From Octopus sinensis (lineage: Eukaryota), in assembly GCF_006345805.1 (NCBI RefSeq), contig NC_043015.1, forward strand, positions 29,264,001 to 29,328,000: a stretch of DNA of 64,000 nt, given 5' to 3'. Below are positions 23,151 to 62,997 of the stretch, piece by piece; position 1 is the first letter of the stretch; every line of letters starts with the position of its first letter. The notes beneath the pieces are model-generated. The model saw only the letters and a list, made by a program, of their open reading frames with translations. It was not told the DNA's origin and searched no databases. The translations under genes were made by a program, and so were the position numbers.

Positions 23151-23727
23151 ATCTATATATATAGATGTGTGTATTTTTCCCTTGTTTACAATTAACATGG
23201 AAAAAATAGATAAATAGTTACCAGGGTAGCAAAAAATCACACACATAAAAAGGTTGTAACTCCTTGTTTTTAAAGGTAGAAACTCCGGGATTACGTGAAA
23301 TATTTTGTATAATATATATAAATAAATAAATGGAGTTAAAATATCTTATTGACGAGTTTTATTTCTTCATTTCCCTGAAGAGAAGATTACATTGTTTTAT
23401 ACCATTTTATTCCTTTGGAATAATACCAGTGATATCTGGTATTATGATATATGAATGGCTATGGGATTGCACTTAGAAAGTTCCCCCCCGAGACACAAGA
23501 CTGGGCAATGCTGTTTATGGAAGACCAGCAGTCACCCATACATGTCAGCCTAGTTAGAGTGTCCGGCTCACAATCATGAGGTAGTGAGTTTGATTTCCAG
23601 ACCAAGCAGTGTGTTGTGTTCTTGAGCAAGACACTTTATCTCACACTGCTCCAGTTCACTCAGCTGTTGAAAGGAGTTTCGATGTCACTGGTGCCAAGCT
23701 GTATCAGCCTTTGCTGATATATATTTA

Positions 23728-26533: not shown

Positions 26534-26979
26534 CATGAATAAATAAAAGAATGGAGTCGAACGAAGATGTTAACAAAATTCCTTTACTCTCAACATATGT
26601 TTCGAAGACAACATGGTTTCATTCCAAAGGAATAAAGGGTGCAAGATGCAATCTTCTCATCAGGAAAGAAAGGGAGCCTCTCTCAACAACAAGACAAACA
26701 AAAATTTCGATGACTGCCTACATGGTAAACAAAACGATAAGTGTTTTTAAAAAACCGTTAGTAGAATTGACGTCAAAGTTAGATAGTAGGAAGAGAAGGG
26801 TTAAAGGAATAATAGGTATTATTCATACATAACACACAAATTTCTGCACATGAACCCAGAGTTTCTACCCTTGGACAGGTCGCTTCAACCGTGTTTCTGA
26901 CGTGAATTTGCTACCCTGGTATCGGTTCATTGAATTTTCCATGCTGACGGTAAACATAGGATAATTCATTCACCTATCG
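26534..26979 (-). mobile_element. Non-autonomous Penelope-like element of about 450 bp in a (TA)n tract, carrying the 26.6-kb hammerhead
   Basis: (TA)n on both sides. A diverged relative lies at 23165-23430 (+), sharing catggaaaa..taccagggtagcaaa..ggtagaaactc..CTGAwGAgaagatt..attcctttggaat. Confidence 0.55.
26581..26673 (-). ncRNA. Type I hammerhead ribozyme, intact core
   Basis: Minus strand: cctttctttc-CTGATGA-gaaga..tcttc-GAAA-C-atat-G-TT-gagag(t)aaagg. About 10-bp stem I with one bulge, 5-bp closing stem II, GUU cleavage triplet. Confidence 0.75.
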
Positions 26980-27653: not shown

Positions 27654-28038
27654 CAAAACAGCAACTGCAACAACAACAACAAGAACAACATCTGCTCCTC
27701 CACAACCGCCAACCAGAAATACAATACCATGCTTATAGTTAGATCAAGCCTATCTACTAACCCAGTAGCTCATCCACTTAGTATTTTGTCTCCATAAACT
27801 GGGAAGAGCATCCAAATATTAAATCAAATCTGTCAAAACCACTGTTCCGTTCAACCAATACTCATGCCTGCATTGAGAAATATTGTAAATGCCTCTCTCT
27901 CTCTATCTCTTTCTCTCTCTCTCTATTTCTCTTTCTCTCTCTCTTTCTCTCTCTATCTCTTTCTCTCTCTTTCTCTTCTCCTCTCTCTCCTTCTCTCTCT
28001 CTTTCTCTTTCTCTCTCTCTTTCTCTTTCTCTCTCTCT

Positions 28039-28138
28039 NNNNNNNNNNNNNNNNNNNNNNNNNNNNNNNNNNNNNNNNNNNNNNNNNNNNNNNNNNNNNN
28101 NNNNNNNNNNNNNNNNNNNNNNNNNNNNNNNNNNNNNN
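28039..28138. other. Assembly gap (100 N)
   Basis: Run of N between (CT)n and (CACT)n repeats. Confidence 1.
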
Positions 28139-33529: not shown

Positions 33530-34800
33530 ACATGTATGCATGTAGGAGTTATGTACGCACCACCTGTTCTACATCTTGTATCAATATTTTGTAACAATAT
33601 ATGTTTGTACGTGTGTCTGTATGTACGTATGCATGTATATGTGCGTGTAGGTAGATAGGAAGGTATGTAGGTAGGTAAGTAGGTGTGTATATATGTATGT
33701 ACGAATGTATGTGCGTGTGTATGTATGTATGTATGTATGTATGTATGTATGTATGTATGTGCGTGTGTATGTATGTATGTATGTATGTATGTGCGTGTGT
33801 ATGTATGTATGTATGTATGTATGTATGTATGCATGTATGTATGTATGTATGTATGTACGTATGTATGTATGTATGTACGTATGTATGTATGTACGTATGT
33901 ATGTATGTATGTACGTATGTATGTATGTATGTATGTATGTATGTACGTATGTATGTATGTATGTATGTACGTATGTATGTATGTATGTACGTATGTATGT
34001 ATGTATGTATGTATGTATGTATGTATGTATGTGCGTGTGTATGTATGTATGTATGTATGTATGTATGTATGTATGTATGTATGTACGTATGTATGTATGT
34101 ATGTGCGTGTGTATGTATGTATGTATGTATGTATGTATGTGCGTGTGTATGTATGTATGCATGTATGTATGCATGTGCATATGTATGTACTATGTATGCA
34201 TGTATATATATGCATGTGTATGTATACATGTGTACACGTATACATGTGTGTATGCATGTATGTATGTATGTATGTATGTATGTATGTATCCGTGTGTATA
34301 TATACAGAAGTGTTTTTTGATGTTTGTATTCTTGCATGTATGAGGATATGTGTGTATATATATGTATGAATGTATGTACATTTATATGTATTTGCATATA
34401 TGCATGTGTGAATATATATGTACGTATGTATGTATGCATGTACGTGTTTGTGTGTATGTATGCCTGTATGTATGCCTGTATGTATGTATGTATGTATGTA
34501 TGTATGTATGTTTTAGGATATATGTGTATATATATGTATGGATGGATGTACATGTATGTGTATGCATGTATGCATATATGCATGTGTGAATATATATGTA
34601 CGTATGTGTGTATGTATGTACGTGTATGTATGTATGTATGTATTTACGTATGTCTGTGTACGTGTGTGTGTATGTATGTATGTATGTATGTATGTATTTA
34701 TGTATGTATGTTCGTGTGTATGTATGTATGCCTGTATGTATATATGTACGTACGTACGAATGCATACATGTATGTATGTTTGTGTGATTGAGTACGTGTG
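33530..34800. repeat. About 1.3-kb (GTAT)n-derived microsatellite
   Basis: Directly visible; source of YVCM/HTYI spurious ORFs. Confidence 0.95.
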
Positions 34801-35535
34801 TGTATATGAGGTGTATACCATTCTCATCATCTTTACAATGTCTTGTACCAGAATTCTCCAGTTAGTTGCAACAACAACAACACCAACAACAACATGTAAA
34901 TCAGGTTGTCCAACGTATTAATACTTCCGGTTGGTCACTAAAAGATACCAAGTATTAAAGCTAATATTGTTACTACATTATTTTCTCTTTCTCTCCATTC
35001 TCTATTTTCTCATTCCCTTCCTTCTCTATCTACTTGTATCTAACTTTTTCTACTCTAGGTACAAGGCCCGACATTTTTGGGGCGGGGGGCCAGTCGATTA
35101 GATCGACCCCAGTACACAACTGGTACTTATTTAATCGACCCCGAAAGGATGAAAGGCAAAATCGACCTCGGCGGAATTTAAACTCAGAACGTGAAGACGG
35201 ACGAAATACCTATTTTTTTACTACCCACAAGGGGCTAAACACAGAGGGGACAAACAAGGACAGACATAGGTATTAAGTCGATTACATCGACCCCAGTGCG
35301 TAACTGGTACTTAATTTATCGACTCCGAAAGGGTGAAAGGCAAAGTCGACCTCGGCGGAATTTGAACTCAGAACGTAAAGAGAGGCGACATACCGCTAGG
35401 CATTTTGCCAGGTGTGCTAACGTTTCTGCCTATCTCTTACTACATATACCTCCATCTGTATCTCTCTGTATATCACTGTCTCTTCCTTAATAATTATCGT
35501 ACTCTCTCTCTCTTCTCTCTCTCTCTCTCTATCTA

Positions 35536-38869: not shown

Positions 38870-39009
38870 TGTGTGTGTGAGAGAGAGACAGACAGACAGA
38901 CAGAGAAAATGTGTTGTGTGTGTGTGTGTGTGCCTCTTGGTCAGTCTTTATCTGCCTTTTTATCTACGTATTTTACCTCTTCCTTTCTTTCTCTTTTTTT
39001 TTTTATCAG

Positions 39010-40158
39010 GTGGATTCTTATGCAAAAACGTCTGCGAAATTCTCCAAGCAAGATTCAATATTCGAAGAACGGCGCAGACGACTGCAAGAAGTCTGTAACG
39101 GGAACGAAAATGTATTCATTGGTAACAACACGGAAGCTAATATCAAAGGCCGAATGCACATTGATTCGAAACACAAAATTATATACTGCGCCATTGAGAA
39201 AACTGGCTCAACATTTTGGAAGCGAACTATGCAAATTCTTATCGGCATACGGAATGCTAGTAACCCGTTTGTTATTCGGGGTATGGAAGCGCATTTCAAT
39301 TTCAATACTCTGAGAAAGGTTTCTTTCGATATAGTTCACGTTCTTTTACAGAAATATACCAAATTCTTGTTCGTGAGAGAACCGTACGCTCGCCTCTTGT
39401 CGGGATATGTCGACAAGCTTTTCTCGCCCAATTCGTTCTACTGGAAATACACAGGCACCTATATTGTTCGTTACTTTCGTTCACTTCCGTCTAACCACAG
39501 TATCAAGTGTGGCCACGACGTCACGTTTCCGGAGTTTATTGATTACTTCATAGATTCGGAAGAACATAATCGATTCAGAAACGGCCATTTCACACCGAGT
39601 TACGATCATTGTCGACCTTGCCAGATTCAGTACGATATCATTGGGAAGCTTGAGTCATTCAAAAACGACACTATATACATTCTGGAAAAACTTGGTGTAG
39701 ATTCTCTCATCCATTTCTCAGATTTTGCCAGAGAGAGCGAAATCGACGCTTTAACCGATGCGGCAGATAACGTCTACGCGATGAGGTTGGCGGTCACAAA
39801 ATGCATGACATTCACAGAAGCCTTACGTCGAGTGTGGAAGAAAATGCAGATCCGTGGTCTTTTGAGCCGCGAAATTCCGTTTCCTTATTCAGACGATTCT
39901 CGGGCTTACATTCCATATTCCACTTTCTCAAAAACATTACTCGATGCTCACGCGCGTTCTGGTCCCCGGGATAAAAGGATCGAAAACCGCAAGCTGGCTC
40001 TCATAGAGGCCTACCGACAAATCGACTACAGACAATTGTTGAGGCTGAAAAGAATTCTTGAACCGGATTGCAAAATATTTGGTTATGATCCGGAACCATC
40101 CATTATCTTCCAGCAAACCAGGCAGCCTGAATCTTTCTATTTTATGTTTGATTATTAA
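39010..40158 (+). CDS. Carbohydrate sulfotransferase (Sulfotransfer_2; CHST11/HNK-1ST-like), large terminal coding exon of 382 aa
   Basis: Long polypyrimidine tract and ttttatcag|GTG acceptor (phase 0). PAPS-binding motifs YCAIEKTGSTFWKR (5'-PSB) and FLFVREPYARLLSGYVDK (3'-PB), plus HF..SYDHCRPCQIQYDIIGKLE. No N-terminal transmembrane segment, so an upstream exon must exist. Exact paralogue not assignable. Confidence 0.9.
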   Translation: MDSYAKTSAKFSKQDSIFEERRRRLQEVCNGNENVFIGNNTEANIKGRMHIDSKHKIIYCAIEKTGSTFWKRTMQILIGIRNASNPFVIRGMEAHFNFNTLRKVSFDIVHVLLQKYTKFLFVREPYARLLSGYVDKLFSPNSFYWKYTGTYIVRYFRSLPSNHSIKCGHDVTFPEFIDYFIDSEEHNRFRNGHFTPSYDHCRPCQIQYDIIGKLESFKNDTIYILEKLGVDSLIHFSDFARESEIDALTDAADNVYAMRLAVTKCMTFTEALRRVWKKMQIRGLLSREIPFPYSDDSRAYIPYSTFSKTLLDAHARSGPRDKRIENRKLALIEAYRQIDYRQLLRLKRILEPDCKIFGYDPEPSIIFQQTRQPESFYFMFDY

Positions 40159-42693: not shown

Positions 42694-43225
42694 GGAGAGG
42701 GGACCAATCGATTACATCGACCCCAGTGTTTCACTGGTACTTAATTTATTGACCTCGAAAGGATGAAAGGCAAAGTCGACCCTGGCGGAATTTGAACTCA
42801 GACGAAATATCTATTTCTTTACTACCCACAAGGGGCTAAACACAGAGAGAACAAACAAGGACAGACAAAGGGATTAAGTCGATTACATCGACCCCAGTGT
42901 GTAACTGGTACTTAATTTATCGACCCCGAAAGGATGTAAGGCAAAGTCGACCTCGGCGGAATTTGAACTCAGAACGTAACAGCAAACGAAATACCTATTT
43001 CTTTACTGCCCACAAGGGGCTAAACACAGAAGGGACAAACAAGGACAGACAAACGGATTAAGTTGATTATATCGACCCCAGTGCGTAACTGGTACTTAAT
43101 TTATCGACCCCGAAACGATGAAAGGCAAAGTCGACCTCGGCGGAATTTGAACTCAGAACGTAACGGCAGACGAAATACGGCTACGCATTTCGCCCGGCGT
43201 GCTAACGTTTCTGCCAACTCGCCGA
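42694..43225 (-). mobile_element. SINE family 3, tandem trimer of about 180-bp body units
   Basis: Repeated gtcgactttgcctttcatcctttcggggtcga..gtaccagttac..ttagccccttgtggg unit; similar multimers at 35095-35430, 46190-46612 and 55800-56200. Confidence 0.75.
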
Positions 43226-43849
43226 CTTCGAAGAAGACAATATTGGCGAGTGAAAAATGTCAAAGTGTCTCCCACATCCGACCATTCATAAAGTCCATGT
43301 GACATACAGCGTTTATAACATGGCGCAAAATTAATTAAGGAACCTTCAGGACTTGTGAATACGCAGCGGGACGTCTTTATTCTGAAGTCCATTATCTGCA
43401 GAACCGTAAGAGTCTGGCACATTTTGGTACAGCTGTATCAATAAGATGCAGAAAGACTTTTTTGTTTTGTTTTCTTCTAGTCCCGACTCTCTCAGGTACT
43501 GGTGACTTTTCAATATCCCGCTTGACAGGAAGGTGGTGGTGGTGGTAGTAGTAGTAGTAGTAGTATAATTACAGTGGTGGTAGCGGCGGCGGCGATGGTG
43601 ACAACAATGGCGATGGTGGCGGCGATGGCGGAGGTGATGGCGATGGCGGTGGCGAGAGAGGACAGTGGTGACCCGGGGTGAGGTAGAAGGGAAATGGTGA
43701 TAGCGGTGGGAGAGGCAGCTGCAAAGTGGGAGAGGAGGTAAGTTACTTTATTTGGGTTTTGGTTGGGGTAGATTTTATCGCGGTTTTTTTCACAGGTGGA
43801 CTTTTCTTTGAATGACAAGATTTTTGGAATTTATTTTCATACGCACGCA

Positions 43850-46115: not shown

Positions 46116-46944
46116 ATCTTTCAAGGGGTCAGTTTGTCGCCTCTCCTATTTGTTGTTTGCATACTGCTACTAACCAGCGTTTTGAGAAAGGCGGCGAGCT
46201 GGCAGAAACGTTAGCACGCCGGGCAAAATGCTCAGCGGTATTTCGTCTACCGCTACGTTCTGAGTTCAAATTCCGCCGAGGTCGACTTTGCCTTTCATCC
46301 TTTCGGGGTCGATAAATTAAGTACCAGTTACGCACTGGGGCCGATATAATCGACTTAATCCGTTTGTCTGTCCTTGTTTGTCCCCTCTGTGTTTAGCCCC
46401 TTGTGGGTAGTAAAGAAATAGGTATTTCGTCTGCCGCTACGTTCTGAGTTCAAATTCCGCCAAGGTCGACTTTGCCTTTCATCCTTTCGGAGTCGATAAA
46501 TAAAGTACCAGTTACGCACTGGGGTTGATATAATCGACTTAATCCGTCTGTCTGTCCTTGTTTGTCCCCTCTATGTTTAGCCCCTTGTGGGTAGTAAAGA
46601 AATAGGTATTTAGCGTCATTTATTGCGATTTCGTTTCATTAAAGATACGGTAGTATATTTTTTAGTGGGGTTGTATAAATAGGATGTTGTGACATTCATG
46701 CGCTTAGCTTGAGTATTAATGGTGTTTTCAACAAGTATTCGTAGATTGAAACTGCATCCTAACTTCAAAGTGATGGGATTCTGGAATCCTGGAACTCAAT
46801 AAATCTATTTAAAATACTGAAATAAACTAACGATCTGATTGGTTTCGTCTTCTTCGCACAATCGACCAAATCAGGCTCGGAGGGTGACGGGCGTTTCATT
46901 TAACCAACACTAGAGGGGAGGAAATAAAGGGTCACGTTTACAGT

Positions 46945-48226: not shown

Positions 48227-48383
48227 TTAATGTTTATTTCATAGACCCGTAAGAGACGAAACATATGTTAGACTTCGATAGGGTCTGAATGTAGTCAGTA
48301 ACGGACATAAAATACGAGGAGACACAATAGTACATTACACCGGTACATCACCGTAATAGTCTTTATTCCACAGCAGAATTAAT

Positions 48384-48389
48384 GTAAGT
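48384..48389 (+). promoter_or_regulatory. Candidate splice donor of a non-coding RSRC1 5' exon
   Basis: aat|GTAAGT in unique, CpG-containing sequence; the ATG exon has an acceptor at 51320, so an upstream donor is likely. The assignment is inference only. Confidence 0.25.
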
Positions 48390-48681
48390 CTTTTAATTCT
48401 ATTAAATTCGATGGTTTTCTCACATTCACCTAATTAATCGGCAAAATATGCTAAGAGTATTAATATTATCGTTACTCGTATGATTATTTGTCTTTAATTA
48501 ATTTGTTTTGTATCCCTTTTACCTTATTCCATCTAATTATAATCAACGGGTTTTCATTCGTTTTGGATAATAAAGATTTGTTGGATTGGCACAGAATGGG
48601 GGATATTTTATTAAATCAATCGTAACTCTATGCCTGATATCTATTTTAGCGATTCACGATAGTAGGGGAGTGAGGAAAGAC

Positions 48682-48924
48682 GGTACTACTAGCGAACAGT
48701 GGTCCCGGTGCGCGTACTCGCGCATCCGCTCTAGCTAGTCATGACTAGTCGATCCTTACTTTGTGTTTTTGTGTTTTATTTACTTTGTTTTTAAAAAATT
48801 AATTATTTTGTGTTTTATTTACTTTGCTACGTAGTCGTTGCAGGATCGACTAGTCACGACTAGCTAGTGCGGATGTGCGACTACGCGAGTGCGCGCACCG
48901 AGACCACTGTTCGCTAGTAGTACC
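48682..48924. mobile_element. Mutator-like MITE, 243 bp
   Basis: TIRs of about 75 bp (GGTACTACTAGCGAACAGTGGTC...); perfect 9-bp TSD AGGAAAGAC at 48673-48681 and 48925-48933. Confidence 0.85.
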
Positions 48925-49469
48925 AGGAAAGACAAGCTCAACTACAGCAGGATTTGAACTTTGAATGCGAAAACACGAAGTATGCGCTGAACACACGAAC
49001 CAACGAATAGCATCTTCGTTATCGCTTGACCTGCTAGAAATAGTAGCCAAATCTCTCAAATTAAACACTCTACTACTATCTTGAGAATAAAGAGCATATT
49101 AGCTAAAAACTGGGTCTGAAAAATTAATAAAAGGTTGGGTGTTCGTGACTTGAATATTTTTTTATCAGAACTGACACGCCGTTAAACAAATACAATAACT
49201 GTAAAATAGGTAGAATAAATTCAGGGTGAATAGTTGATAAATGTAAACACCTGTATATGCCAGCTATTAGAGTGGCATATATTGAGTGACAAAACGGTAT
49301 AGACGATTTTTTGGAGTCCAATAATACCATGTACACCTATTTGATTATGAAGATTTACAAACATACTTTCCCAGTGATACTCGGTTTACCTACCATTATA
49401 AACAATACCAAATGTTTTTTTCTCAAACCTTTCATAATGTGTTACAAGTCTGTGGTGTAGCAATTGCAC

Positions 49470-49562
49470 GCGGCTGAAGAGGGCTTTTGAACTGTCTGTT
49501 ATGTCGATTATGCATTGATGTAAGAATAAGTTGTTCTATAAAGCTCGAAACATATGTACCGC
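49470..49562 (+). ncRNA. Type I hammerhead ribozyme, intact core
   Basis: gcgg-CTGAAGA-gggcttt..(52 nt)..aaagctc-GAAA-C-atat-G-TA-ccgc. Stem I GCGG/CCGC, stem II 7 bp, stem III C-G with palindromic loop, predicted cleavage after GUA at 49558. Confidence 0.8.
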
Positions 49563-49832
49563 AACATCCTTTGTGTCCTGTTTTTCATTTTATTTCATTT
49601 GATACATATATGTAACTGTAAAATCTTTAACTGAATCCCAACCGTTCCTACTACACTACATCATCATCAAAAACAAACATTTCTTGGTTCAAATTACACT
49701 GAGATCTACTTAACCTTTCGCCTTTCCGAAGGCCTATAAAATAAAGGGAATACTTTTCGAATAGTTATCTCATCTGGCATTACACTTCAAGTTCAAATCA
49801 CATTGAAGCCAACTTAGCCTTTCATCTCTTCA

Positions 49833-50207
49833 TCTCTTCTCTCTATATATAAACGGCAGTTCGTCTGTGCGTGTTTCTGTGTGTCTGTTTGCTTGTACCC
49901 TCACCCTGACCACAGCTTTCAACCGATTCTGATGAAACTTGACACACACATAGCCCAATGTCATAATTCAAAACTAACGCAGCGAAAATTTTGAAAAGTT
50001 CCCCCAGTTCTGAAAAAAATCGATAAATTCGACATGGGGTCGACAATCAGAAACACAAACCACAGACTGTCTAGGGGACGCAACTCGACCTTTTTAACTA
50101 AAATAAAAATTTACCATCATTTTTTTTCCATTTTTTGGCTATAACTCTAAAAATGCTTTATAGTTATTTCCCTTACAAACCCGAGCAACGCCGGGCGATA
50201 CTGCTAG
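49833..50207 (+). mobile_element. Non-autonomous Helitron
   Basis: A|TC...TATATAAAC 5' end; 3' hairpin CCCGAGCAACGCCGGG upstream of CTAG|T. Confidence 0.75.
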
Positions 50208-50682
50208 TAGTTGATAAAATAAAGTACCTGACCAGTACTGGAGTTAATGGTATTGTCGACTTTGCCTTTCATCCTTTCGGGGTCGATAAATTAAGTATCA
50301 GTTACGCACTGGGGTCGATGTAATCGACTTAATCCGTTTGTCTGTCCTTGTTTGTACTCTCTGTGTTTAGCCCCATGTGGGTTGTAAAGAAATAGGTAAA
50401 TAAGTACCAGTTGAGTACTGGGGTTGATGTAATCGACTTACCCTCTCCCCCAAAATTGGTGACCTTGCGCCAGAATTTGAAATCAGTGCTTGTTGCATTT
50501 CTTTGTAATCCCCTTCATGAAGTTCAACCATTTGAGATCAACTCTTGCCACTTCTCGTCATGTCTTCCACAGTAACCTTCTATTTTGGATCATTTGGCCC
50601 TTTTTTTTTTACTTGTGGCTGGCTGTGTGATTACTTTGTAACTACATAGCTCCGGGTTCATTCTGAGTGAAATCCCATTGTA

Positions 50683-50793
<111 letters not shown>

Positions 50794-51330
50794 TTGGTAT
50801 ATATATATATATTACCAAATATATACGTTTTTATTATTATTTTGCAATTTACTTAATCTTTGTTATATTATTGTTATTTTAATTTTAATATTTCTATTAC
50901 ATGTAATTTTCTAGATGGTGTAATTTAACTGTTCATTTTGAATTGATAAAAGGTGGGGGTTTTTCTAATTTATATATATATATATATATTATATTTTGTG
51001 AAATTTGATTTAGTTTTTCTAAATAGAATTTTTCCCTGTAAGTTAGGAATAATATTCCCTCAAATAATTATTATATATATAGGTCAGTTGAGTTAGTGGT
51101 TTGGAATAACCATCTAAGGGATAAAAATATCCAGTATACAACCGGTATAGTTACCTATGTTAACCCTGGGCATACATATGCAAGCATCTTATGCTCATAG
51201 GTTACAGGTAATGACAAATGATAAACCAATAAGGTTTGAATTGAGTAAGGTTTTACTGCTATTTCTATTGTTCAAGCAATTATATACATACTAACTAATG
51301 AATGTTAATGACTGTTTCAGCATTACAAAG

Positions 51331-51404
51331 ATGGGTCGTTACCTGGACAGTGATGAGGAGCGAAAGAAACACAAGAAGAAGAAGAAACGCCGTTCACGAT
51401 CCAG
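51331..51404 (+). CDS. RSRC1: Arginine/serine-rich coiled-coil protein 1 orthologue, coding exon 1 (MGRYLDSDEERKKHKKKKKRRSRS)
   Basis: Acceptor tttcag at 51320, ATG at 51331, donor CAG|gtgaga at 51405 (phase 2). N-terminus resembles vertebrate RSRC1 (MGRRSSDTEEE..KRKKKHRRRS). Confidence 0.85.
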
Positions 51405-51500: not shown

Positions 51501-51537
<37 letters not shown>

Positions 51538-51539
<2 letters not shown>

Positions 51540-51940
51540 AGATAAGGGCATAAGAAAAATTCTAATGCCAGATACGCCGACACAAAAAAATTTTCAATAA
51601 CCATTAAATTTATGCGTCTCGAAATAAACCGATAGAAATCTCTAAAAAATTTGTTATTACCGTATTGGTCCAATTTTGGGGTTAATTCACTAGAAATTTT
51701 CCCCTCTTCAGCGGCACATACGCGAGGTATGAATAAGTATTTCATTTATATCTCGCGTATGTGCCGCTGAAGAGGGGAAAATTTCTTGTGAATTAACCCC
51801 GAAATTGAACCAATACCGTAATAACAAATTTTTTAGAGATTTCTATCGGTTTATTTCGAGACGCATAAATTTAATGGTTATTGAAAATTTTTTTGTTTCA
51901 GCGTATCTGGCATTAGAATTTTTCTTCTGCCCTTATCTTG
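51538..51940. mobile_element. 403-bp near-perfect foldback made of two inverted hammerhead-bearing arms (Penelope-like inverted pLTR pair)
   Basis: CAAGATAAGGGCA...TGCCCTTATCTTG, arms of about 195 bp, centre near 51740, (TA)n on the left. Right arm (+, 51762-51820) reads tgccg-CTGAAGA-gggg..cccc-GAAA-ttg-aac-caa-TA-ccgta. Left arm (-, 51658-51716) is the same but with AAAA for GAAA and a fully paired stem I (tgccg/cggta). Confidence 0.75.
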
Positions 51941-52082
51941 TAAATTATGTATAAATTTTACCTTTAAAGGCATTTTTTGATATGCTGGCCATTGATAAAA
52001 AATTTTTCTCGAAAAGAATTTTATCCTATATCAATTATATATATATATATATAATCAAAATAAGCAACAAGAATGTCTCCGG

Positions 52083-52175
52083 TAATTTGGTACGATCGTT
52101 TCGTACTACATCATTTTATTAAATGTTGTAAGTATTACAACAGTTTTAAAATGCTGAGCACTCATCAGCCAATTA
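52083..52175 (-). ncRNA. Type I hammerhead ribozyme, intact core, antisense within an RSRC1 intron
   Basis: Minus strand: taattgg-CTGATGA-gtgct..agtac-GAAA-C-gatc-G-TA-ccaaatta. The stem II insert itself forms a hairpin (tgttgtaa-tac-ttacaaca). Confidence 0.75.
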
Positions 52176-52926
52176 TAGAGGTTTTCCATTAATACAAAAA
52201 TTTTCATATCAAGTGGCAACATTATAGAGAAGGTAGATATATAGACAAAGATGTGGATTTAAATTTTAAGAACATTTGAGGTAGTGGAGCCCATCAACTG
52301 ACTGACTAAGATTCAGTTGTTCCAGACTACTGTAAGATTCTGAGAGGGAAGAACATATATATATGTATATATATATATATATATATGAATATATATTGAT
52401 GTAGGCATGGCTGTGTGATAAGAAGCTTGCTTCCCAACAACATGGTTCCGGGTTCATATCCACTACACAGCACCTTGGGCAAGTGTCTTATGCTGTAGCC
52501 TTGGGCCGAGTAAAGCCTTGTGAGTGGATTTGGTAGACAGAAACTGAAAGAGGCCCATCGTATATATACATATATGTATGTATGTGTGTGTGTGTCTGTG
52601 TTTGTCCCCCCAACATCGCTTGACAACTGATGATGGTGTGTTTACATCCCCGTAACTTAGCGGTTCGGCAAAAGAGACTGATAGAATAAGTACTAGGCTT
52701 ACAAAGAATAAGTCCTGGGGTCGATTTGTTCGACTAAAGGCATTACGGCAGTACTCCAGCATTTCTTGCCTCATGTAGGAGTGCAGTGTACCAATCACAA
52801 CATGTAAGAGTGTAGCATGTAAGGGTGCAGTGAGTGGAGAGTGAAATTCTTTGGGCTTTATTTTTTCTTTTTCTTTTCTGTATCTTTCTGCCCTTGGCTA
52901 ATTTCTTTGGGGTTCTTTATTTCTAG

Positions 52927-53520
52927 ATCTGGGAGTTCCTCATCGTCATATGAAGATCGTCATCAGAAGAAATCCAAAAGCAAAAAGAAACACAGACATC
53001 GCTCCAACAGTCGGTCTCCAACGTATTCCAACCAAAGTTATTCGAGGGATCGCTCAAATCGAAGATCTCCGTCTTATGACAGAGACAAAGACAAGTTCAA
53101 GCGGCGCCGAAGCTATTCAAGGGAAGTTTCCAGTCACAGATCTCATTCACTGGAACGAGCGCGGGACTCGGATCAAAACCGTAGTTCCGACCGTTATAGA
53201 AACAAAGGCGGGTCTGGGGACAGGTCACGCTCAAGGGAACGGTCACGATCCAGCAGAGACAGGTCGCGGTCCAGCAGAGACAGATCACGGTCCAGAGAAA
53301 AGTCTTCACGAACCAAAAGTAAATACAAAGACAGGAGCCACTCTCGGGATAGAAACGGTGACAGGCATCAATCAAGGAGCTATTACCGACCATCTACTAG
53401 CTCAACGCAGTCAGATTACAAAGAGTCTAGATCTCATAGCCGCCGCCGGTCACGAAGCCGAAGCAAGTCATGGTCATCCTCTGACCGGAGGTCAAACCAA
53501 CATTCAAAACGATCAAAGAG
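52927..53520 (+). CDS. RSRC1: RSRC1 coding exon 2, 594-nt RS/RD-rich domain
   Basis: Acceptor ttctag|A completes the AGA codon from exon 1; open RS-dipeptide frame; donor AG|gtacca (phase 2). Confidence 0.88.
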
Positions 53521-54010: not shown

Positions 54011-54106
54011 GTCCAGATCTCCAGACAGAAGTAGTTACCATTCTTGGCAGTCTACCAGTCCAGAATCAAAACAAGCAACAACCGCCACCACCGCTTCTAA
54101 GAAAGA
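54011..54106 (+). CDS. RSRC1: RSRC1 coding exon 3 (RSRSPDRSSYHSWQSTSPESKQATTATTASKK)
   Basis: ttgtag|GTCC acceptor, GA|gtaagt donor, 96 nt, phase 2 to phase 2. Confidence 0.85.
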
Positions 54107-55612: not shown

Positions 55613-56274
55613 TAATGGATTATGTAAGATGTTGCATGCGTGAGGTGTCAACTATCCCAAGTTAAAAATCATTATTGGCATGTTGCTGAAAACTAGGCCT
55701 TTGGATTAATGTGTTACATTCTTGAACAATAAAATATGAAAGCCTTCTTCTAGTTGCAGTTTAGGCCTGTATAGAAGATTTTGTTGAAGGTGTTACAGGC
55801 AGCGAGCTGGCAGAAACGTTAGCACGCCGGACGAAATGCGTAGCCGTATTTCGTCTGCCGTTACGTTCCGAGTTCAAATTCCGCCGAGGTCCACTTTGCC
55901 TTTCATCCTTTCGGGGTCGATTAAATAAGTACCAGTTACGCACTGGGGTCGATATAATCAACTTAATCCGTTTGTCTGTCCTTGTTTGTCCTCTCTGTGT
56001 TTAGCCCCTTGTGGGTAGTAAAGAAATAGGTATTTCGTCTGCTGTTACGTTCTGAGTTCAAATTCCGTCGAGGTCAACTTTGCCTTTCATCCTTTCGGGG
56101 TCGATTAAATAAGTACCAGTTACACACTGGGGTCGATATAAACTTAATCCGTTTGTTTGTCCTCTCTGTGTTTAGCCCCTTGTGGGTAGTAAAGAAATTG
56201 GTATTACATGCAAGAAGCATTAATTGCCCCAAATTAGCAACATCTAAAATCTTCCTGACTTTATTCTCTTACAG

Positions 56275-56311
56275 TGATCTCTGTGCCAAAATACCAGGTT
56301 TTGCTACAATG
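56275..56311 (+). CDS. RSRC1: RSRC1 coding exon 4, 37-nt micro-exon (DDLCAKIPGFATM)
   Basis: Polypyrimidine tract ending cttacag, donor ATG|gtaagt; converts phase 2 to phase 0 exactly as needed to join the next exon. Confidence 0.75.
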
Positions 56312-58155
56312 GTAAGTAAGTTGCAATTTTAGAATATTGCATTCTTTTACATTCAATGTTTGCATGGGTCAGAAGGGTTATTTGTAGTAGCAATTTTATG
56401 GGTTAGTCAATAGGTGTGGGCCTGGTTGTGTGGTAAGAAGTTCACTTCCCAACTACATGGTTCTGGGTTCAGTCCCACTGCATGGCACTTCAGGCAAATG
56501 TTTTCTACTACAGCCTCAGAGGCTGGAGAGGCTGCCATGGCCCTATAATACTATACAGTACCCTTCCGCCTCTTCCTCCTACAAGCCCACTGCACTACTG
56601 TAAGTTTGTGGAAGTAAACACTAACACATTTAATGTGGTGAGTGCAGTATCTGTAATTAATCAAATTTATAATTTATACCTATATTGAAGAAAAGTAAAC
56701 GTTGTCGAACTCTGCGGAACCGGTTTTCTGCCTAGTCAGGCGAAGTTGAGCAAACAGAGTTATCTTCCTTGCTTTGTGTTGGAAACAATCCCAACGTGTA
56801 TACCAGTAAGGTTTTTTAACCTCGTAATCACAAGGACAGTAGTTCACAGCTATTGCACTTCATACCTAGTTGCCAACCACTCAGAATCTTTATATTTCTA
56901 CACAATTACTGATGAGTCTTTAATGATGGATGAAACCAGCCTCTTCAGTTGTCATTTCCGAGAAGCTGAAGTCCTTGTGGTTTAACCACAACGACTTAGT
57001 TTTACAGACAAATTTAATATATTTGTGTATTAAACATATGGCTGTGTGCTTAAGAAGTTCGCTTTGCGACTACATGGTTTCAGGTTCAGTCCCACTGCAC
57101 AGCATCTTGGACAAGTGTCTTCTACTATAGCCCTGGTTTAGTCAATGCCTTGTGAGTGAATTTGGTTGACAGAAACTGTAGGAAGGCAGCGAGCTGGCAG
57201 AACCGTTAACACGTCGGGCAAAATGCTTAGTGGTATTTCGTCTGCCGGTACGTTCTGAGTTCAAATTCCGCCGAGGTCGACTTTGCCTTTCATCCTTTCG
57301 GGGTCGCAAATGAAAATATATACACATATATTTTCCTTAAGGGCGAACCGGTCGCCAAGTCCACGAGACTGTTCACAAATGTTCACTTGTGTGAGCCAAA
57401 ATTACCATCTCCGTTCCCGCTTAGAAGAGCGCTTCTCTATATGTAGGGTTTTCCCTGAGAGAAGGTTAGGCACGTCCACTCGGTAGGGTTACTGATTCAA
57501 AAAAGATAGATTTAGCGGGAACGCTTTCAGTTTGCAGTTCTCTGCACATGCGCACGAGGGAACTTCCGGCGGCCTACCAGAAGCAATCCAACTCTGCGCA
57601 TGCATGCTGAAAACTTCCAAAAATAGCGTCACTACAAGTACAGTGTAGTTTTCCACCTTGTAGTACCTGTATAGTTAGGCAGACTACACCATTACAGTAC
57701 TATCTTAACGATGGACACAGGACAGTGAAGTTCACCAGCTTGTGGAACGAACTTACAATGAGGTGGCCCAGTTCAGTGTTGAGTGAATGTAATTTGATTC
57801 ATGGATGATTCAAACAGTAATTGATGATCTTACAGCATGGGCAGTAGGACTTCGTGTGGCATCATGGCATGTCCACACAATAGTGGGTCTGTGACACATA
57901 ACTATGGGTCAGTCCTCCTCCAAGTTCTGTATGTTTTTTTTTTAACTGCTGGATCATCTTCTGCTATTTGGCCCTTGACAAGTACTTGTAATACCTGTAT
58001 AGTTAGGCAGACTGGCCTATCAATATGGCCAGGTGCAAGTCAGTAATTTTGTCTTTTTGTAATTAATTTTTTTTGTCCGTTCCCTTACTAATTACCAAAT
58101 TGTTTTTCACTCTATTTCATTGACTCCTTTTTCTTTTCTTTTCTTTTTTACACAG

Positions 58156-58207
58156 GAACCTGCTGAACAGGCAAAAATTAGGTTACAGATGGCTCTCAAA
58201 GCTGCTG
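58156..58207 (+). CDS. RSRC1: RSRC1 coding exon 5 (EPAEQAKIRLQMALKAA)
   Basis: cacag acceptor, G|gtaagt donor; matches the conserved RSRC1 motif PAEQAKARLQLVLEAA. Confidence 0.92.
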
Positions 58208-58579: not shown

Positions 58580-59215
58580 TTATAAGTCCGTGCCGGTTAC
58601 ACACTGGGGTCGATATAATAGACTTAATCCATTTGTCTGTTCTCTCTATGTTTAGCCCCTTGTGGGCAATAAAGAAATAGGTATTTCGTCTGTCTTTATG
58701 TTCTGAGTTCAAATTCCTCCAAGGTCAACTTTGCCTTTCATCCTTTTGGGGTCGTTAAATTAAGTACCAGTTATGCACTGGGGTCAATGTAATCGGCTTA
58801 ATCCCTTTGTCTTTGTTTGTCCCCTCTATGCTTAGCCCCTTGTGGGCAGTAAAGTAATAAGTATTTTGTCTGTCTTCGTGTTCTGAGTTCAAATTCCGCC
58901 GAGGTCAACTTTGCCTTTCATCCTTTCGGGGTCGATTAAATAAGTACCAGTTATGCACTGGGGTCAGTGTAGTCGACTTAATCCGTTTATCCCCTCTATG
59001 TTTAGCCCCTTGTGGGTGGTAAAGAAATAGGTATTTTGTCTGTTTTTACATTTTGAGTTCAAATTCCTCCAAGGTCAACTTTGCCTTTCATCCTTCCGGG
59101 GTTGATTAAATTAAGTACCAGTTGCGCACTGGAGTCAATGTAATCGATTTAATCCCTTTGTCTGTCCTTGTTTGTCCCCTCTATGTTTAGCCCCTTGTGG
59201 GCAATAAAGAAATAA
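58580..59215 (+). repeat. About 3.6 tandem units (172-177 bp) of the SINE family 3 body
   Basis: cactggggtc recurs at about 58603, 58776, 58956 and 59128. Confidence 0.75.
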
Positions 59216-59447: not shown

Positions 59448-59611
59448 CTGCTGCTGATGAACAGCTGCGAAAGATGCAGGAGAAAAACACAATGGTTAAG
59501 GAGCAACGCCAATTAATGGAACAGCCTGATTTTGCTATCACAGTGGAAGACATTGAAAGTTCTGCTTTCACCCAATCAACATTTGTTTCTGGCACTAATC
59601 GAGTGCCCCAG
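59448..59611 (+). CDS. RSRC1: RSRC1 coding exon 6 (AAADEQLRKMQE...VEDIESSAFTQSTFVSGTNRVPQ)
   Basis: ttgcag acceptor, CAG|gtaatt donor, phase 1 to 0; similar to RSRC1 AKADEAL...IEAIESDSFVQQTF. Confidence 0.92.
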
Positions 59612-60344: not shown

Positions 60345-61260
60345 CAGCGCCGCCCCAACTGGCCTCCGTGCCGATGGCACGTAAAAAGCACAATCCGATC
60401 GTGGCCGTTTGCCAGCCTCGCCTGGCCTCCGTACCGGTGGCACGTAAAAAGCACCATCCGATCGTAGCCGTTGCCAGCCTCGCCTGGCCTCTGTACCGGT
60501 GGCATGTAAAAAGCACCATCCGATCGTGGCCGTTTGCCAACCTCGCCTGGCCTCCGTACCGGTGGCACGTAAAAAGCACCATCCGATCGTGGCCGTTTGC
60601 CAGCCTCATCTGGCACGTAAAAAGCACCCACTACACTCACGGAGTGGTTGGCGTTAGGAAGGGCATCCAGCCGTAGAAACATTGCCAGATCAGACTGGAG
60701 CCTGGTGCAGCCTTCTGGCTTCCCAGACCCCAGTTGAACCGTTCAACCCAGGCCTGGTGCAGCCTTCTGGCTTCCCAGACCCCAGTTGAACCGTTCAACC
60801 CAGGCCTGGTGCAGCCTTCTGGCTTCCCAGACCCCAGTTAAACCGTTCAACCCAGGCCTGGTGCAGCCTTCTGGCTTCCCAGACCCCAGTTAAACCGTTC
60901 AACCCAGGCCTGGTGCAGCCTTCTGGCTTCCCAGACCCCAGTTGAACCGTTCAACCCAGGCCTGGTGCAGCCTTCTGGCTTCCCAGACCCCAGTTGAACC
61001 GTTCAACCCAGGCCTGGTGCAGCCTTCTGGCCTCCCAGACCCCAGTTGAACCGTCCAACCCAGGCCTGGTGCAGCCTTCTGGCTTCCCAGACCCCAGTTG
61101 AACCGTTCAACCCAGGCCTGGTGCAGCCTTCTGGCTTCCCAGACCCCAGTTAAACCGTTCAACCCAGGCCTGGTGCAGCCTTCTGGCTTCCCAGACCCCA
61201 GTTGAACCATCCAACCCATGCTAGCATAGAAAGCGGATGCTAAACGATGATGATGATGAT
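60345..61260 (+). mobile_element. RTE-type short retroelement with two internal minisatellite expansions
   Basis: About 4 x 62-63-bp units (60361-60612), 10 x 52-bp units (60701-61218) and a (GAT)n tail; an unexpanded relative lies at about 54612-54785 (-). Confidence 0.7.
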
Positions 61261-61268
61261 TATTATTA

Positions 61269-61653
61269 TCTCTCTCTATATAAACGGCAGTTTGTCTGTG
61301 CGTGTTTCTGTGTGTCTGTTTGCTTGTACCCTCACCCTGACCACGGCTTTCAACCGATTCTGATGAAACTTGATACACACATAGCCCAATGTCATAATTC
61401 AAAACTAACGCAGCGAAAATTTTGAAAAGTTCCCCCAGTTCTGAAAAAAATCGATAAATTCGACATGGGGTCGAGAATCAGGAACACAAACCACAAACTG
61501 TGTAGGGGACGCAACTCCACCTTTTTTAACTATCAAAAAAAATTTACCATCATTTTTTTTCCATTTTTTTGCTATTTTTTGGCTATAACTCTCTAAAAAT
61601 GCTTTATAGTTATTTCCCTTACAAACCTGAGCAACGCCGGGCGATACTGCTAG
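61269..61653 (+). mobile_element. Non-autonomous Helitron, second copy (RSRC1 intron 6)
   Basis: Highly similar to 49833-50207 with the same A|TC and CTAG|T termini. Confidence 0.75.
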
Positions 61654-61717: not shown

Positions 61718-61852
61718 GAATCCCCTGAAGAAGAACAGTTTGGTACGATAGCGGAAATCAAACCTGGCAGTGTGAAGGCCAACGCTGGCCAGGCAACAGC
61801 ACCAGACAATTACAAATACAACATTGACATAGATACATTTGCACACCCGAGT
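61718..61852 (+). CDS. RSRC1: RSRC1 coding exon 7 (ESPEEEQFG...YKYNIDIDTFAHPS)
   Basis: atgacag acceptor, AGT|gtaagt donor, 135 nt, phase 0; ends like RSRC1 SLAHPN. Confidence 0.88.
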
Positions 61853-62907: not shown

Positions 62908-62997
62908 TTGTTCATCGACATCAGTGAGAAGAAGAAGAGGTGGTTGCAGAAGCTGACCGTCTTCAGGAAACGGAAGACTTCAAGCCTTCTGCTTTAA
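62908..62997 (+). CDS. RSRC1: RSRC1 terminal coding exon (LFIDISEKKKRWLQKLTVFRKRKTSSLLL*)
   Basis: ctttcag acceptor, TAA at 62995-62997; similar to RSRC1 [24 protein letters not shown]. Spliced CDS totals 1242 nt (413 aa plus stop). Confidence 0.9.
   Translation: MFIDISEKKKRWLQKLTVFRKRKTSSLLL

What the first reader, a model, noticed from the sequence alone, without database searches (positions are those of the whole stretch)
49470..49562. Intact hammerhead in RSRC1 sense orientation, 1.8 kb upstream of the start-codon exon
Seen: perfect core, GC-rich 4-bp stem I, 7-bp closing stem II and a GUA site at 49556-49558. The ATG exon begins at an acceptor (51320), so this region is probably a 5'-UTR intron (candidate donor at 48384). 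Inference: the ribozyme may be transcribed within RSRC1 pre-mRNA and could cut it co-transcriptionally, attenuating expression of a splicing factor, or be restrained by its need to dimerise.
Basis: partly seen in the sequence, partly recalled or inferred. Interest (0 to 1): 0.75.

Follow-up and report, generated by a model that had tools for sequence, protein, structure and literature searches.

The report
Hammerhead ribozyme carried by inserted retroelement
The hammerhead self-cutting RNA motif upstream of the octopus RSRC1 start codon is real, but it arrived inside a 406-base mobile element found only in one octopus lineage and is already mutated in the sister species, so it is most likely transposon baggage and not a regulator of RSRC1.

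Summary
Window 49470-49562 (+) carries a complete type I hammerhead: 4-bp helix I, CUGAAGA, 7-bp helix II closing a 52-nt hairpin, GAAA, a 2-bp helix III with palindromic loop, and cleavage after A49558. My descriptor finds three such motifs in the window (also 52087-52172 and 26587-26668, both minus strand), against 0.03 expected per shuffled window.

The window is Octopus sinensis. RSRC1 lies on the + strand.

The regulatory reading is not supported:
- The hammerhead sits 51 nt from the 3' end of a 406-nt insertion (49208-49613) flanked by an 11-bp target-site duplication.
- O. bimaculoides has the empty site.
- In O. vulgaris the orthologous copy carries a core G8-to-A change and diverges at the neutral rate.
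- The architecture (short open helix I, tiny palindromic helix III) matches the poorly cleaving minimal hammerheads of Penelope-like elements and retrozymes.

Verdict: a relic ribozyme module of a non-autonomous retroelement, and a new member of a known kind.

The parts
49470..49473 (+). Helix I, 5' strand (GCGG; positions 2.4-2.1)
   Evidence: Pairs with CCGC at 49559-49562.
49474..49480 (+). Catalytic core box C3 U4 G5 A6 A7 G8 A9 (CUGAAGA)
   Evidence: Exact match to CUGANGA. In O. vulgaris it reads CUGAAAA, i.e. G8A.
49481..49546 (+). Helix II: a 7-bp closing stem (GGGCUUU/AAAGCUC, G10.1-C11.1) around a 52-nt insert that folds into an extended imperfect hairpin
   Evidence: The MFE and centroid of the 93-mer, and of the whole 406-nt element, keep this helix.
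49547..49550 (+). Core box G12 A13 A14 plus A15.1 (GAAA)
49550..49557 (+). Helix III: A15.1-U16.1 and C15.2-G16.2 capped by AUAU. The 8-mer ACAUAUGU is self-complementary, which is the dimerisation-type helix III.
   Evidence: Read from the sequence. The same geometry occurs in the two other copies.
49558..49558 (+). A17. The predicted self-cleavage is between 49558 and 49559.
   Evidence: Position in the motif. Cleavage itself is not tested.
49559..49562 (+). Helix I, 3' strand (CCGC; positions 1.1-1.4)
   Evidence: Helix I does not extend further, because c49469 and a49563 are unpaired.
49208..49613 (+). 406-nt inserted element (GC 0.34) that carries the hammerhead 262 nt from its 5' end and 51 nt from its 3' end. 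It has no ORF, no tRNA-like head and no tandem copy.
   Evidence: Absent from the orthologous site of O. bimaculoides (L003) and present in O. vulgaris (L002).
49197..49207 (+). Target-site duplication, left copy (AACTGTAAAAT)
   Evidence: O. bimaculoides has a single AACTGTGAAAT. The joined flanks align 132/145 across the junction.
49614..49624 (+). Target-site duplication, right copy (AACTGTAAAAT)
48384..51320 (+). Putative first intron of RSRC1 (donor GTAAGT, acceptor tttcag), 2937 nt, which contains the element
   Evidence: The splice pair is implied by O. vulgaris CAI9736882.1. Donor and acceptor are conserved in three species. The transcription start is unknown.
51321..51404 (+). RSRC1 exon with the start codon (ATG at 51331; MGRYLDSDEERKK...)
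52087..52172 (-). Second hammerhead of the same architecture (UUGG|CUGAUGA|GUGCU[49]AGUAC|GAAAC GAUC GUA|CCAA), antisense to RSRC1 in the intron after the ATG exon. It lies in an ~817-nt insertion (51538-52354) inside a (TA)n microsatellite.
   Evidence: The insertion is absent in O. bimaculoides.
26587..26668 (-). Third hammerhead of the same architecture (CUUUC|CUGAUGA|GAAGAU[41]GUCUUC|GAAAC AUAU GUU|GAGAG), in a ~397-nt unit bounded by TA repeats. The hammerhead is 264 nt from the 5' end and ~52 nt from the 3' end of that unit.

Best explanation
The motif is the ribozyme module of a ~400-nt non-autonomous retroelement of the hammerhead-bearing kind (Penelope-like-element pLTR / non-LTR retrozyme type). 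That element inserted, with an 11-bp target-site duplication, into the region upstream of the RSRC1 start-codon exon. The insertion happened in the common ancestor of Octopus sinensis and O. vulgaris, after the split from O. bimaculoides. In the parent element the hammerhead would process element transcripts. Two copies in one multimeric or read-through RNA pair their palindromic ACAUAUGU segments into a long helix III, which allows cleavage after H17 and releases unit-length RNA for reverse transcription by an autonomous partner. That step is inferred from the literature, not shown here. The solitary copy at 49470-49562 is a passenger. It is probably transcribed in sense within an RSRC1 5' intron. 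It has only a 4-bp open helix I, no loop-loop tertiary contact, a 2-bp helix III and no partner in cis, so any self-cleavage should be slow. It is drifting neutrally: intact in O. sinensis and core-mutated in O. vulgaris.
For: Shown: (1) There are three motifs of one architecture in 64 kb against 0.03 expected. Helices I and II differ in sequence among the three, yet every pair is kept and G10.1-C11.1 is invariant. All three have a 2-bp helix III with a palindromic tetraloop and a 41-52-nt hairpin inside helix II. (2) The hammerhead lies in a 406-nt insertion flanked by a perfect 11-bp direct repeat. O. bimaculoides has the empty site with one repeat copy, and the joined flanks align 91% across the junction. 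(3) The second copy lies in an ~817-nt insertion inside a (TA)n tract that is uninterrupted in O. bimaculoides. The third is bounded by TA repeats. Two units have nearly the same geometry, 262/51 nt and 264/~52 nt around the ribozyme. (4) The O. vulgaris orthologue has G8A plus two helix-II-insert changes, 3/93, which equals the 3.2% divergence of the surrounding 664 nt. The second copy's orthologue has a broken helix II pair and has lost its palindromic loop. (5) The literature match is close. PLE min-hammerheads have helix I of 4-5 bp, helix II of 6-8 bp, G10.1-C11.1 and a palindromic helix III. They are mostly solo and sequence-heterogeneous copies, show no detectable cleavage as single motifs, and cleave weakly as dimers (PMC4209133). 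Metazoan retrozymes are 170-400 nt, low in GC, and have TSDs longer than 4 bp (PMC7229834). Monomer copies are dispersed, ~43% of them in introns (bioRxiv 10.64898/2026.07.22.740005).
Against: No Penelope-like RT or GIY-YIG coding remnant lies next to any of the three copies. No second copy of this particular 406-nt element exists in the window or in the 77 kb of related loci. Sequence similarity among the three units outside the ribozyme is marginal (z 2.4-3.5, or none), so the family assignment rests on architecture. The motif lacks the extra nucleotide between A9 and G10.1 that is typical of PLE min-hammerheads. The unit is not tandem and its RNA is not unusually self-paired (z +1.5), unlike textbook retrozymes. 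Its ends do not coincide with the cleavage site. Neither transcription nor cleavage was tested. Which of G8 and A8 is ancestral cannot be proven without an outgroup that carries the insertion.
Confidence: 0.8

Rival explanations
1. One reading: the hammerhead is transcribed within RSRC1 pre-mRNA and cuts it co-transcriptionally, attenuating expression of this splicing factor, possibly gated by dimerisation.
For: The core is intact in O. sinensis and in sense orientation. It lies inside the donor 48384 / acceptor 51320 intron used by an O. vulgaris gene model, and both splice sites are conserved. Invertebrate retrozyme hammerheads with a 2-bp helix III can cleave as monomers at 0.1-0.8 per min (PMC7229834).
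Against: The element is a lineage-specific insertion that is absent from O. bimaculoides. The sister species carries G8A, which leaves C3 unpaired and alters the residue whose 2'-OH is the proposed general acid. Divergence equals the neutral background. There is no loop 1 and therefore no tertiary contact, which normally costs orders of magnitude in rate at physiological Mg2+ (PMC3088659). No compatible partner exists on the + strand: the GAAACAUAUGUU at 48258 has no core and an incompatible helix I. The transcription start is unknown. From my own knowledge, not read here (Dye, Gromak and Proudfoot 2006, whose reference only was seen; Fong et al. 2009): introns cut by slow hammerheads are still spliced.
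Confidence: 0.07
2. The element is a still-active retrozyme-like unit with its own transcription, producing self-cleaved or circular RNA independently of RSRC1.
For: The core is intact, the TSD copies are identical, the unit size and GC content lie in the retrozyme range, and there are three intact motifs in 64 kb.
Against: It is a single copy and not a tandem, so one cleavage site cannot release a unit-length RNA. The predicted RNA is not highly self-paired. The insertion predates the O. sinensis / O. vulgaris split and has decayed in O. vulgaris. No recent near-identical copies occur in about 140 kb of octopus DNA.
Confidence: 0.1
3. The motif is a chance match to the hammerhead consensus in AT-rich DNA.
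For: Hammerhead-like strings do occur by chance in large genomes (PMC3088659). No Rfam hit was found. The fold is no more stable than shuffles.
Against: The expectation is 0.03 per window and three are observed. All three share features the descriptor did not require: a palindromic tetraloop, G10.1-C11.1, helix II of 5-7 bp with a long hairpin, and a ~50-nt tail to the end of the unit. It sits in a TSD-flanked insertion.
Confidence: 0.02

Closest known systems
Minimal type I hammerheads of Penelope-like elements (Cervera and de la Pena 2014, PMC4209133)
   Same: Both are type I with a short open helix I (4-5 bp) and no defined loop 1. Both have a longer-than-usual helix II (6-8 bp), an invariant G10.1-C11.1, and a tiny palindromic helix III that implies action as a dimer. 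Both are mostly solitary, dispersed copies that vary in sequence, and single-copy activity is expected to be poor.
   Different: There is no unpaired nucleotide between A9 and G10.1. Helix II carries a 41-52-nt insert that forms a second hairpin. No RT/GIY-YIG ORF or pLTR pair lies nearby. The carrier is a discrete ~400-nt unit with an 11-bp TSD.
Metazoan non-LTR retrozymes (Cervera and de la Pena 2020, PMC7229834; Li et al. 2026 preprint, 10.64898/2026.07.22.740005)
   Same: The unit is within 170-400 nt and has low GC (0.34). The type I hammerhead has a 2-bp helix III plus tetraloop, as in invertebrates. The TSD is longer than 4 bp. Monomer copies are dispersed, many of them in introns.
   Different: This copy is not in tandem, and the ends of the unit are not at the cleavage site. 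No loop 1 / loop 2 tertiary motif is present. The predicted RNA is not rod-like or highly paired (z +1.5). Circular RNA was not assessed.
Newt satellite 2 / amphibian hammerheads (Epstein and Gall 1987; Forster et al. 1988, as summarised in PMC6155905 and PMC7229834)
   Same: Helix III is weak with a palindromic loop, so efficient cleavage needs two copies that form an extended helix III.
   Different: Those sit in long tandem arrays that supply the partner, and they keep the loop-loop contacts. Here the copy is solitary.
[quoted passage not shown]
   Same: Both are type I hammerheads in sense orientation inside an intron of a protein-coding gene.
   Different: Those are conserved across amniotes, have canonical tertiary contacts, and are detected by Rfam models. 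This one is lineage-restricted, mutated in the sister species, and not detected by any Rfam model.
Sm-alpha SINE-like hammerhead element of Schistosoma mansoni (Ferbeyre et al. 1998, cited in PMC6155905)
   Same: Both are short non-autonomous dispersed retroposons that carry a type I hammerhead.
   Different: No tRNA-like head was found here (ARAGORN none; no Rfam tRNA match). The Schistosoma ribozyme is a fast, full hammerhead with tertiary contacts.

Membership tests
Hammerhead ribozyme, type I (motif level) | Conserved core C3U4G5A6N7G8A9 ... G12A13A14 | tested here: met
   CUGAAGA at 49474-49480 and GAA at 49547-49549.
Hammerhead ribozyme, type I (motif level) | A15.1-U16.1 pair followed by H17 (not G) at the cleavage site | tested here: met
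   A49550 pairs with U49557, and A49558 is H17.
Hammerhead ribozyme, type I (motif level) | Three helices around the core, with helix I open-ended and G10.1-C11.1 closing helix II | tested here: met
   Helix I is 4 bp, helix II is 7 bp and helix III is 2 bp. Helix III is too weak to be predicted by folding.
Hammerhead ribozyme, type I (motif level) | Loop 1 / loop 2 (or pseudoknot) tertiary contact needed for fast cleavage at physiological Mg2+ | tested here: not met
   Helix I ends after 4 bp with no loop or bulge. No obvious contact was seen, but only inspection was possible.
Hammerhead ribozyme, type I (motif level) | Site-specific self-cleavage | not testable with these tools
   This needs in vitro transcription or RNA end mapping.
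Rfam hammerhead families (RF00163, RF00008, RF02275, RF02276, RF02277) | Covariance-model score at or above the gathering threshold | tested here: not met
   There is no hammerhead match at gathering score or at E<=10 on 350-600-nt slices around any of the three copies. The likely reason is the long helix II insert and the short helices I and III.
PLE minimal hammerhead | Helix I of 4-5 bp, helix II of 6-8 bp, G10.1-C11.1, palindromic 15.2-16.2 / loop 3 | tested here: met
   compared with PMC4209133.
PLE minimal hammerhead | Unpaired nucleotide between A9 and G10.1 | tested here: not met
   Helix II starts directly after A9 in all three copies.
PLE minimal hammerhead | Location in a pLTR flanking an RT + GIY-YIG ORF | tested here: not met
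   There are no RT or endonuclease remnants in stop-free segments next to the copies, nor among ORFs >=110 aa in the window. The literature says most genomic copies are solo, so this does not exclude a PLE origin.
Non-LTR retrozyme | Head-to-tail tandem repeats of a 170-400-nt unit, each with a hammerhead | tested here: not met
   No tandem or second copy was found. It is a monomer only.
Non-LTR retrozyme | Unit size, low GC, and a TSD longer than 4 bp | tested here: met
   406 nt, GC 0.34, 11-bp TSD.
Non-LTR retrozyme | Highly self-paired unit RNA, expressed as circular RNA | tested here: not met
   The MFE of the 406-nt RNA is weaker than shuffles (z +1.5). Expression is not testable here.
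Domesticated intronic hammerhead (HH9/HH10-like) | Orthologous conservation of an intact motif across species | tested here: not met
   It is absent in O. bimaculoides and carries G8A in O. vulgaris.

The most novel reading that the evidence does not exclude
The intact sense copy does self-cleave in nascent RSRC1 pre-mRNA of O. sinensis and measurably changes RSRC1 output. Under that reading, O. sinensis (intact G8), O. vulgaris (natural G8A) and O. bimaculoides (empty site) form a natural allelic series for an intronic ribozyme in a splicing-factor gene. The three copies would also represent an undescribed cephalopod family of solitary ~400-nt hammerhead elements with an extended helix II.
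Probability: 0.07. Interest if true: 0.6.

Novelty: new member of a known kind. Interest (0 to 1): 0.3.

Why it matters
It shows that a perfect-looking ribozyme in sense orientation inside a gene need not be regulatory. Two related genomes were enough to date the insertion, define the mobile unit and its target-site duplication, and show neutral decay. It also adds cephalopods, which are not covered in the hammerhead papers I could read, to the animals that carry Penelope/retrozyme-type hammerheads. The variant here has a ~60-nt helix II that the curated Rfam models miss. Finally, three octopus species offer a ready-made comparison (intact, core mutant, empty site) for testing whether such solitary intronic hammerheads do anything at all.

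Tried and rejected
- Rfam cmscan of the whole window at gathering score, and of slices around each copy at E<=10, gave no hammerhead family.
- I looked for PLE coding remnants in stop-free segments flanking the three copies (Pfam) and among all ORFs >=110 aa. None were found.
- I looked for further or degenerate copies. With <=1 core mismatch allowed, nothing more appears in the window. O. vulgaris yields only the G8A orthologue, and an exact-core scan of O. bimaculoides (28.8 kb) yields none.
- The 3'-half-like GAAACATATGTT at 48258 (+) was considered as a cis partner or degenerate copy. It was rejected because it has no 5' core and an incompatible helix I, and about 0.4 such strings are expected by chance (my own estimate).
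- Homology among the three units outside the ribozyme is not significant upstream. Downstream it is weak and driven by T-rich and TA low complexity.
- A tRNA-derived SINE head was sought: ARAGORN found none.
- Retrozyme-like rod structure was tested and not found.
- Transcription start: the only transcript contig found (Logan, related species) covers the 3' half of the CDS. Gene ranges returned for O. bimaculoides are CDS-based (start equals the ATG), so they give no UTR information.
- Conservation around the putative 5' exon is no higher than in neighbouring orthologous DNA.
- Orthology of the third copy (26.6 kb) could not be assessed, because neither related locus covers it.

Full report
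**1. The observation**

The stretch 49470-49562 (+) reads GCGG CUGAAGA GGGCUUU-[52 nt]-AAAGCUC GAAA C AUAU G U A CCGC. In standard hammerhead numbering this gives the following:
- Helix I is 4 bp (49470-73 with 49559-62).
- The core box C3-A9 is complete (49474-80).
- Helix II is 7 bp, starts with G10.1-C11.1 and contains one G.U (49481-87 with 49540-46).
- G12 A13 A14 A15.1 lie at 49547-50.
- Helix III has only two pairs (A15.1-U16.1, C15.2-G16.2) around AUAU.
- A17 is at 49558, so cleavage would fall between 49558 and 49559.

Rfam does not report it, either at gathering score for the whole window or at E<=10 on a 600-nt slice. Folding of the 93-mer gives helix I plus a long, imperfect helix II in the centroid structure. 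It is no more stable than shuffled sequence (z -0.47).

**2. More than chance**

I wrote a descriptor scan: exact core, helix I >=4 bp, helix II >=3 bp with a loop up to 70 nt, helix III >=2 bp, and U16.1 followed by H17. It finds three loci in the window:
- the reported one;
- 52087-52172 (-): UUGG CUGAUGA GUGCU[49]AGUAC GAAAC GAUC GUA CCAA;
- 26587-26668 (-): CUUUC CUGAUGA GAAGAU[41]GUCUUC GAAAC AUAU GUU GAGAG.

Three hundred dinucleotide-preserving shuffles gave a mean of 0.03 loci per window, and none with helix II >=6 bp.

The three copies share features the descriptor did not ask for:
- a 2-bp helix III with a self-complementary tetraloop;
- G10.1-C11.1;
- helix II of 5-7 bp closing a 41-52-nt insert that folds into a second hairpin;
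- helix I of 4-5 bp.

Helices I and II differ in sequence in all three copies, yet every pair is maintained. Allowing one core mismatch adds no further loci. This is a real family and not a chance string.

**3. Organism and gene**

The ORF at 38911-40158 (+) is 100% identical to carbohydrate sulfotransferase 11-like of Octopus sinensis, XP_036367125.1. The window is therefore O. sinensis.

Downstream, eight coding exons on the + strand encode a 413-aa protein: 51331-51404, 52927-53520, 54011-54106, 56275-56311, 58156-58207, 59448-59611, 61718-61852 and 62908-62997. It is 409/413 identical to the RSRC1 part of O. vulgaris CAI9736882.1. It is homologous to mollusc 'serine/Arginine-related protein 53-like', which is RSRC1/SRrp53.

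The start-codon exon begins at 51321, after tttcag. The O. vulgaris model is a chimera of the sulfotransferase N-terminus and RSRC1. Its junction residues ...VIR AELI ITKMGRY... can only be read as GCAGAATTAAT|gtaagt (window 48374-48383) spliced to 51321. The GTAAGT donor and the acceptor are conserved in O. sinensis, O. vulgaris and O. bimaculoides.

In O. bimaculoides the 10-nt 'micro-exon' is 9 nt long. This argues that its coding use is an annotation artefact, while the donor may still belong to a non-coding 5' exon.

The hammerhead therefore lies, in sense, in an annotated intron of 2937 nt. Where RSRC1 transcription starts remains unknown. The only transcript contig I could obtain covers the 3' half of the CDS. 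Conservation around the putative 5' exon is no higher than in neighbouring orthologous DNA.

**4. What carries the ribozyme**

I fetched the orthologous loci of O. vulgaris (L002; 96-97% nucleotide identity) and O. bimaculoides (L003).

In O. bimaculoides the donor-to-acceptor distance is 715 nt and the hammerhead region is missing. The break-points are exact. O. sinensis has AACTGTAAAAT at 49197-49207 and again at 49614-49624, with 406 nt in between. O. bimaculoides has one copy, AACTGTGAAAT, and continuous flanks. The joined O. sinensis flanks align 132/145 across the junction. O. vulgaris has the same insertion at 403 nt.

This is the signature of a retroposed insertion with an 11-bp target-site duplication. 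The insertion occurred after the split from O. bimaculoides and before the O. sinensis / O. vulgaris split.

The properties of the unit are as follows:
- GC content is 0.34.
- It has no ORF, and no tRNA-like head.
- It has no tandem partner.
- Its RNA is not unusually structured (z +1.5).
- The hammerhead sits 262 nt from the 5' end and 51 nt from the 3' end.

The other two copies behave alike. The 52087-52172 copy lies in an ~817-nt insertion (51538-52354) inside a (TA)n tract that is uninterrupted in O. bimaculoides. The 26587-26668 copy lies in a ~397-nt unit bounded by TA repeats, with the ribozyme 264 nt from one end and ~52 nt from the other. Outside the ribozyme the three units are at best marginally similar. 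No Penelope-like RT or GIY-YIG remnants are adjacent.

**5. Is the ribozyme under constraint?**

The O. vulgaris orthologue (L002 24922-25014) reads CUGAAAA, i.e. G8 to A, and has two further changes in the helix II insert. That is 3/93 differences, the same as the 3.2% divergence of the surrounding 664 nt.

G8 pairs with C3, and its 2'-OH is the proposed general acid. The only natural variant at this pair reported in these elements is the covarying U3-A8. C3 with A8 is therefore expected to be severely impaired.

The orthologue of the second copy has a broken helix II pair (C10.4 to G), and its loop 3 has changed from GAUC to GACC, losing the palindrome.

There is an ascertainment caveat. I started from copies that are intact in O. 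sinensis, and the ancestral state at G8/A8 cannot be proven without an outgroup carrying the insertion. Even so, the pattern is what neutral decay predicts, not what a conserved regulatory element predicts.

**6. How it most likely works**

The architecture matches the minimal type I hammerheads that Cervera and de la Pena found in the terminal repeats of Penelope-like elements, which also occur massively as solitary heterogeneous copies in invertebrate genomes. Those have a short helix I (4-5 bp) without a defined loop 1, a large helix II (6-8 bp), G10.1-C11.1 and a tiny palindromic helix III. They are proposed to act as dimers. In vitro, a single motif showed no detectable cleavage and dimers showed low activity (PMC4209133).

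Unit size, low GC and a TSD longer than 4 bp match metazoan non-LTR retrozymes (PMC7229834). A 2026 preprint derives these from PLE terminal repeats and finds their monomers dispersed, ~43% of them in introns. PLE hammerheads lie near the 3' end of the element, and TA microsatellites are preferred targets of some PLE clades (PMC8557442). Both points fit the geometry seen here.

The inferred mechanism for the parent element is as follows. Two copies on a multimeric or read-through transcript pair their ACAUAUGU segments into an 8-bp helix III. This assembles two active sites and releases unit-length RNA for reverse transcription in trans.

The solitary copy near RSRC1 has no partner on its strand. 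The GAAACAUAUGUU at 48258 lacks a core and has an incompatible helix I. The copy also has no loop-loop contact, and such contacts raise activity by orders of magnitude at low Mg2+ (PMC3088659). Some monomer activity cannot be excluded, because invertebrate retrozyme hammerheads with 2-bp helix III reach 0.1-0.8 per min. Even weak cleavage would therefore not necessarily lower RSRC1 output.

**7. Comparison and novelty**

It works like a PLE/retrozyme hammerhead. As for membership:
- It meets the motif-level definition of a type I hammerhead.
- It meets most structural criteria of PLE min-hammerheads.
- It lacks the bulged nucleotide after A9.
- It has an unusually long helix II.
- It is not next to PLE coding sequence, is not tandem, and is not rod-like.
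- It is not recognised by any Rfam hammerhead model.
- It fails the defining criterion of domesticated intronic hammerheads such as HH9/HH10, which is orthologous conservation.

I found no paper in the held library describing hammerheads in cephalopods. I rate it a new member of a known kind.

**8. Verdict**

The regulatory inference is not supported.

The useful residue is a natural three-species series for a direct test: intact in O. sinensis, G8A in O. vulgaris, empty site in O. bimaculoides.

Noticed in passing
window 52087-52172 (-), within insertion 51538-52354: A second intact hammerhead of the same architecture lies antisense to RSRC1 in the intron after the ATG exon. The ~817-nt insertion sits inside a (TA)n microsatellite and is absent in O. 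bimaculoides. Its O. vulgaris orthologue has a broken helix II pair and a non-palindromic loop 3.
   Followed up: yes
window 26587-26668 (-), unit about 26536-26932: A third intact hammerhead (CAUAUG loop, GUU site) lies in a ~397-nt unit bounded by TA repeats. Its orthology could not be checked because the related loci do not reach it.
   Followed up: partly
window 23142-23437 (+): This is a diverged paralogue of the third unit. It has ~190 nt of shared upstream sequence followed by TTTCCCTGAAGAGAAGATTAC...TTATTCCTTTGGAATAA, which is the 5' half of the hammerhead. The GAAA / helix III half is missing, so the copy is degenerate or truncated.
   Followed up: partly
window 51521-51956: A 92.6% inverted duplication has arms of about 218 nt centred near 51739. 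Each arm carries a hammerhead-core-like string, GCCG CUGAAGA GGGG-N19-CCCC GAAA, but no canonical helix III / cleavage site / helix I partner was found. It lies next to the second hammerhead, and the arrangement recalls the inverted truncated copies described for Penelope-like insertions.
   Followed up: partly
window 48258-48269 (+): GAAACATATGTT is identical to the 3' half of the hammerheads, lies 1.2 kb upstream on the same strand, and has no 5' core. About 0.4 such strings are expected by chance in the window (my estimate).
   Followed up: yes
window 56906-56985 (+); L002 33179-33260: A weaker hammerhead-like string (UUA CUGAUGA GUCU..GGAU GAAA, then a 4-bp helix III with a 39-nt loop) lies in an RSRC1 intron, in sense. 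Helix I is 3 bp here and 4 bp in O. vulgaris. It was found only with the relaxed descriptor and may be chance.
   Followed up: no
window 38911-40158 (+); 34538-34921: The upstream gene is carbohydrate sulfotransferase 11-like (Sulfotransfer_2). O. vulgaris protein CAI9736882.1 fuses its first ~130 residues to RSRC1 through a 10-nt micro-exon (48374-48383). This looks like a chimeric gene model, because the micro-exon is 9 nt in O. bimaculoides.
   Followed up: partly
window 49701-51275: A further ~1.6 kb of SINE-like and TA-repeat sequence in the same putative intron is absent from O. bimaculoides. The intron grew from 715 nt to 2937 nt by insertions.
   Followed up: partly
window 46237-46611 and many other sites (e.g. 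5860-6100, 31549-31790, 35092-35453, 42805-43228, 55797-56169, 58633-59170): An abundant ~184-nt repeat, often in tandem pairs, carries a tRNA-T-arm-like GTTCAAATTCCGCC and a CCTTTCGGAGTCGATAAATAAAGTACCAG core. It looks like a SINE family.
   Followed up: no
window 48680-48920: A ~240-nt stretch is absent from O. bimaculoides. ORFs on opposite strands around it share a peptide (GTTSEQWSRCA.SR), which indicates an inverted repeat and possibly a small foldback or MITE-like insertion.
   Followed up: no
window 60596-61323: A tandem array of about 10 copies of a 52-nt unit lies in an RSRC1 intron.
   Followed up: no
window 12038-12553 (-): A 171-aa ORF resembles the N-terminal DNA-binding part of a mariner/SETMAR-type transposase, judged by eye.
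   Followed up: no
window about 27990-28100: A run of 100 N (an assembly gap) lies inside CT/GA-rich low-complexity sequence.
   Followed up: no
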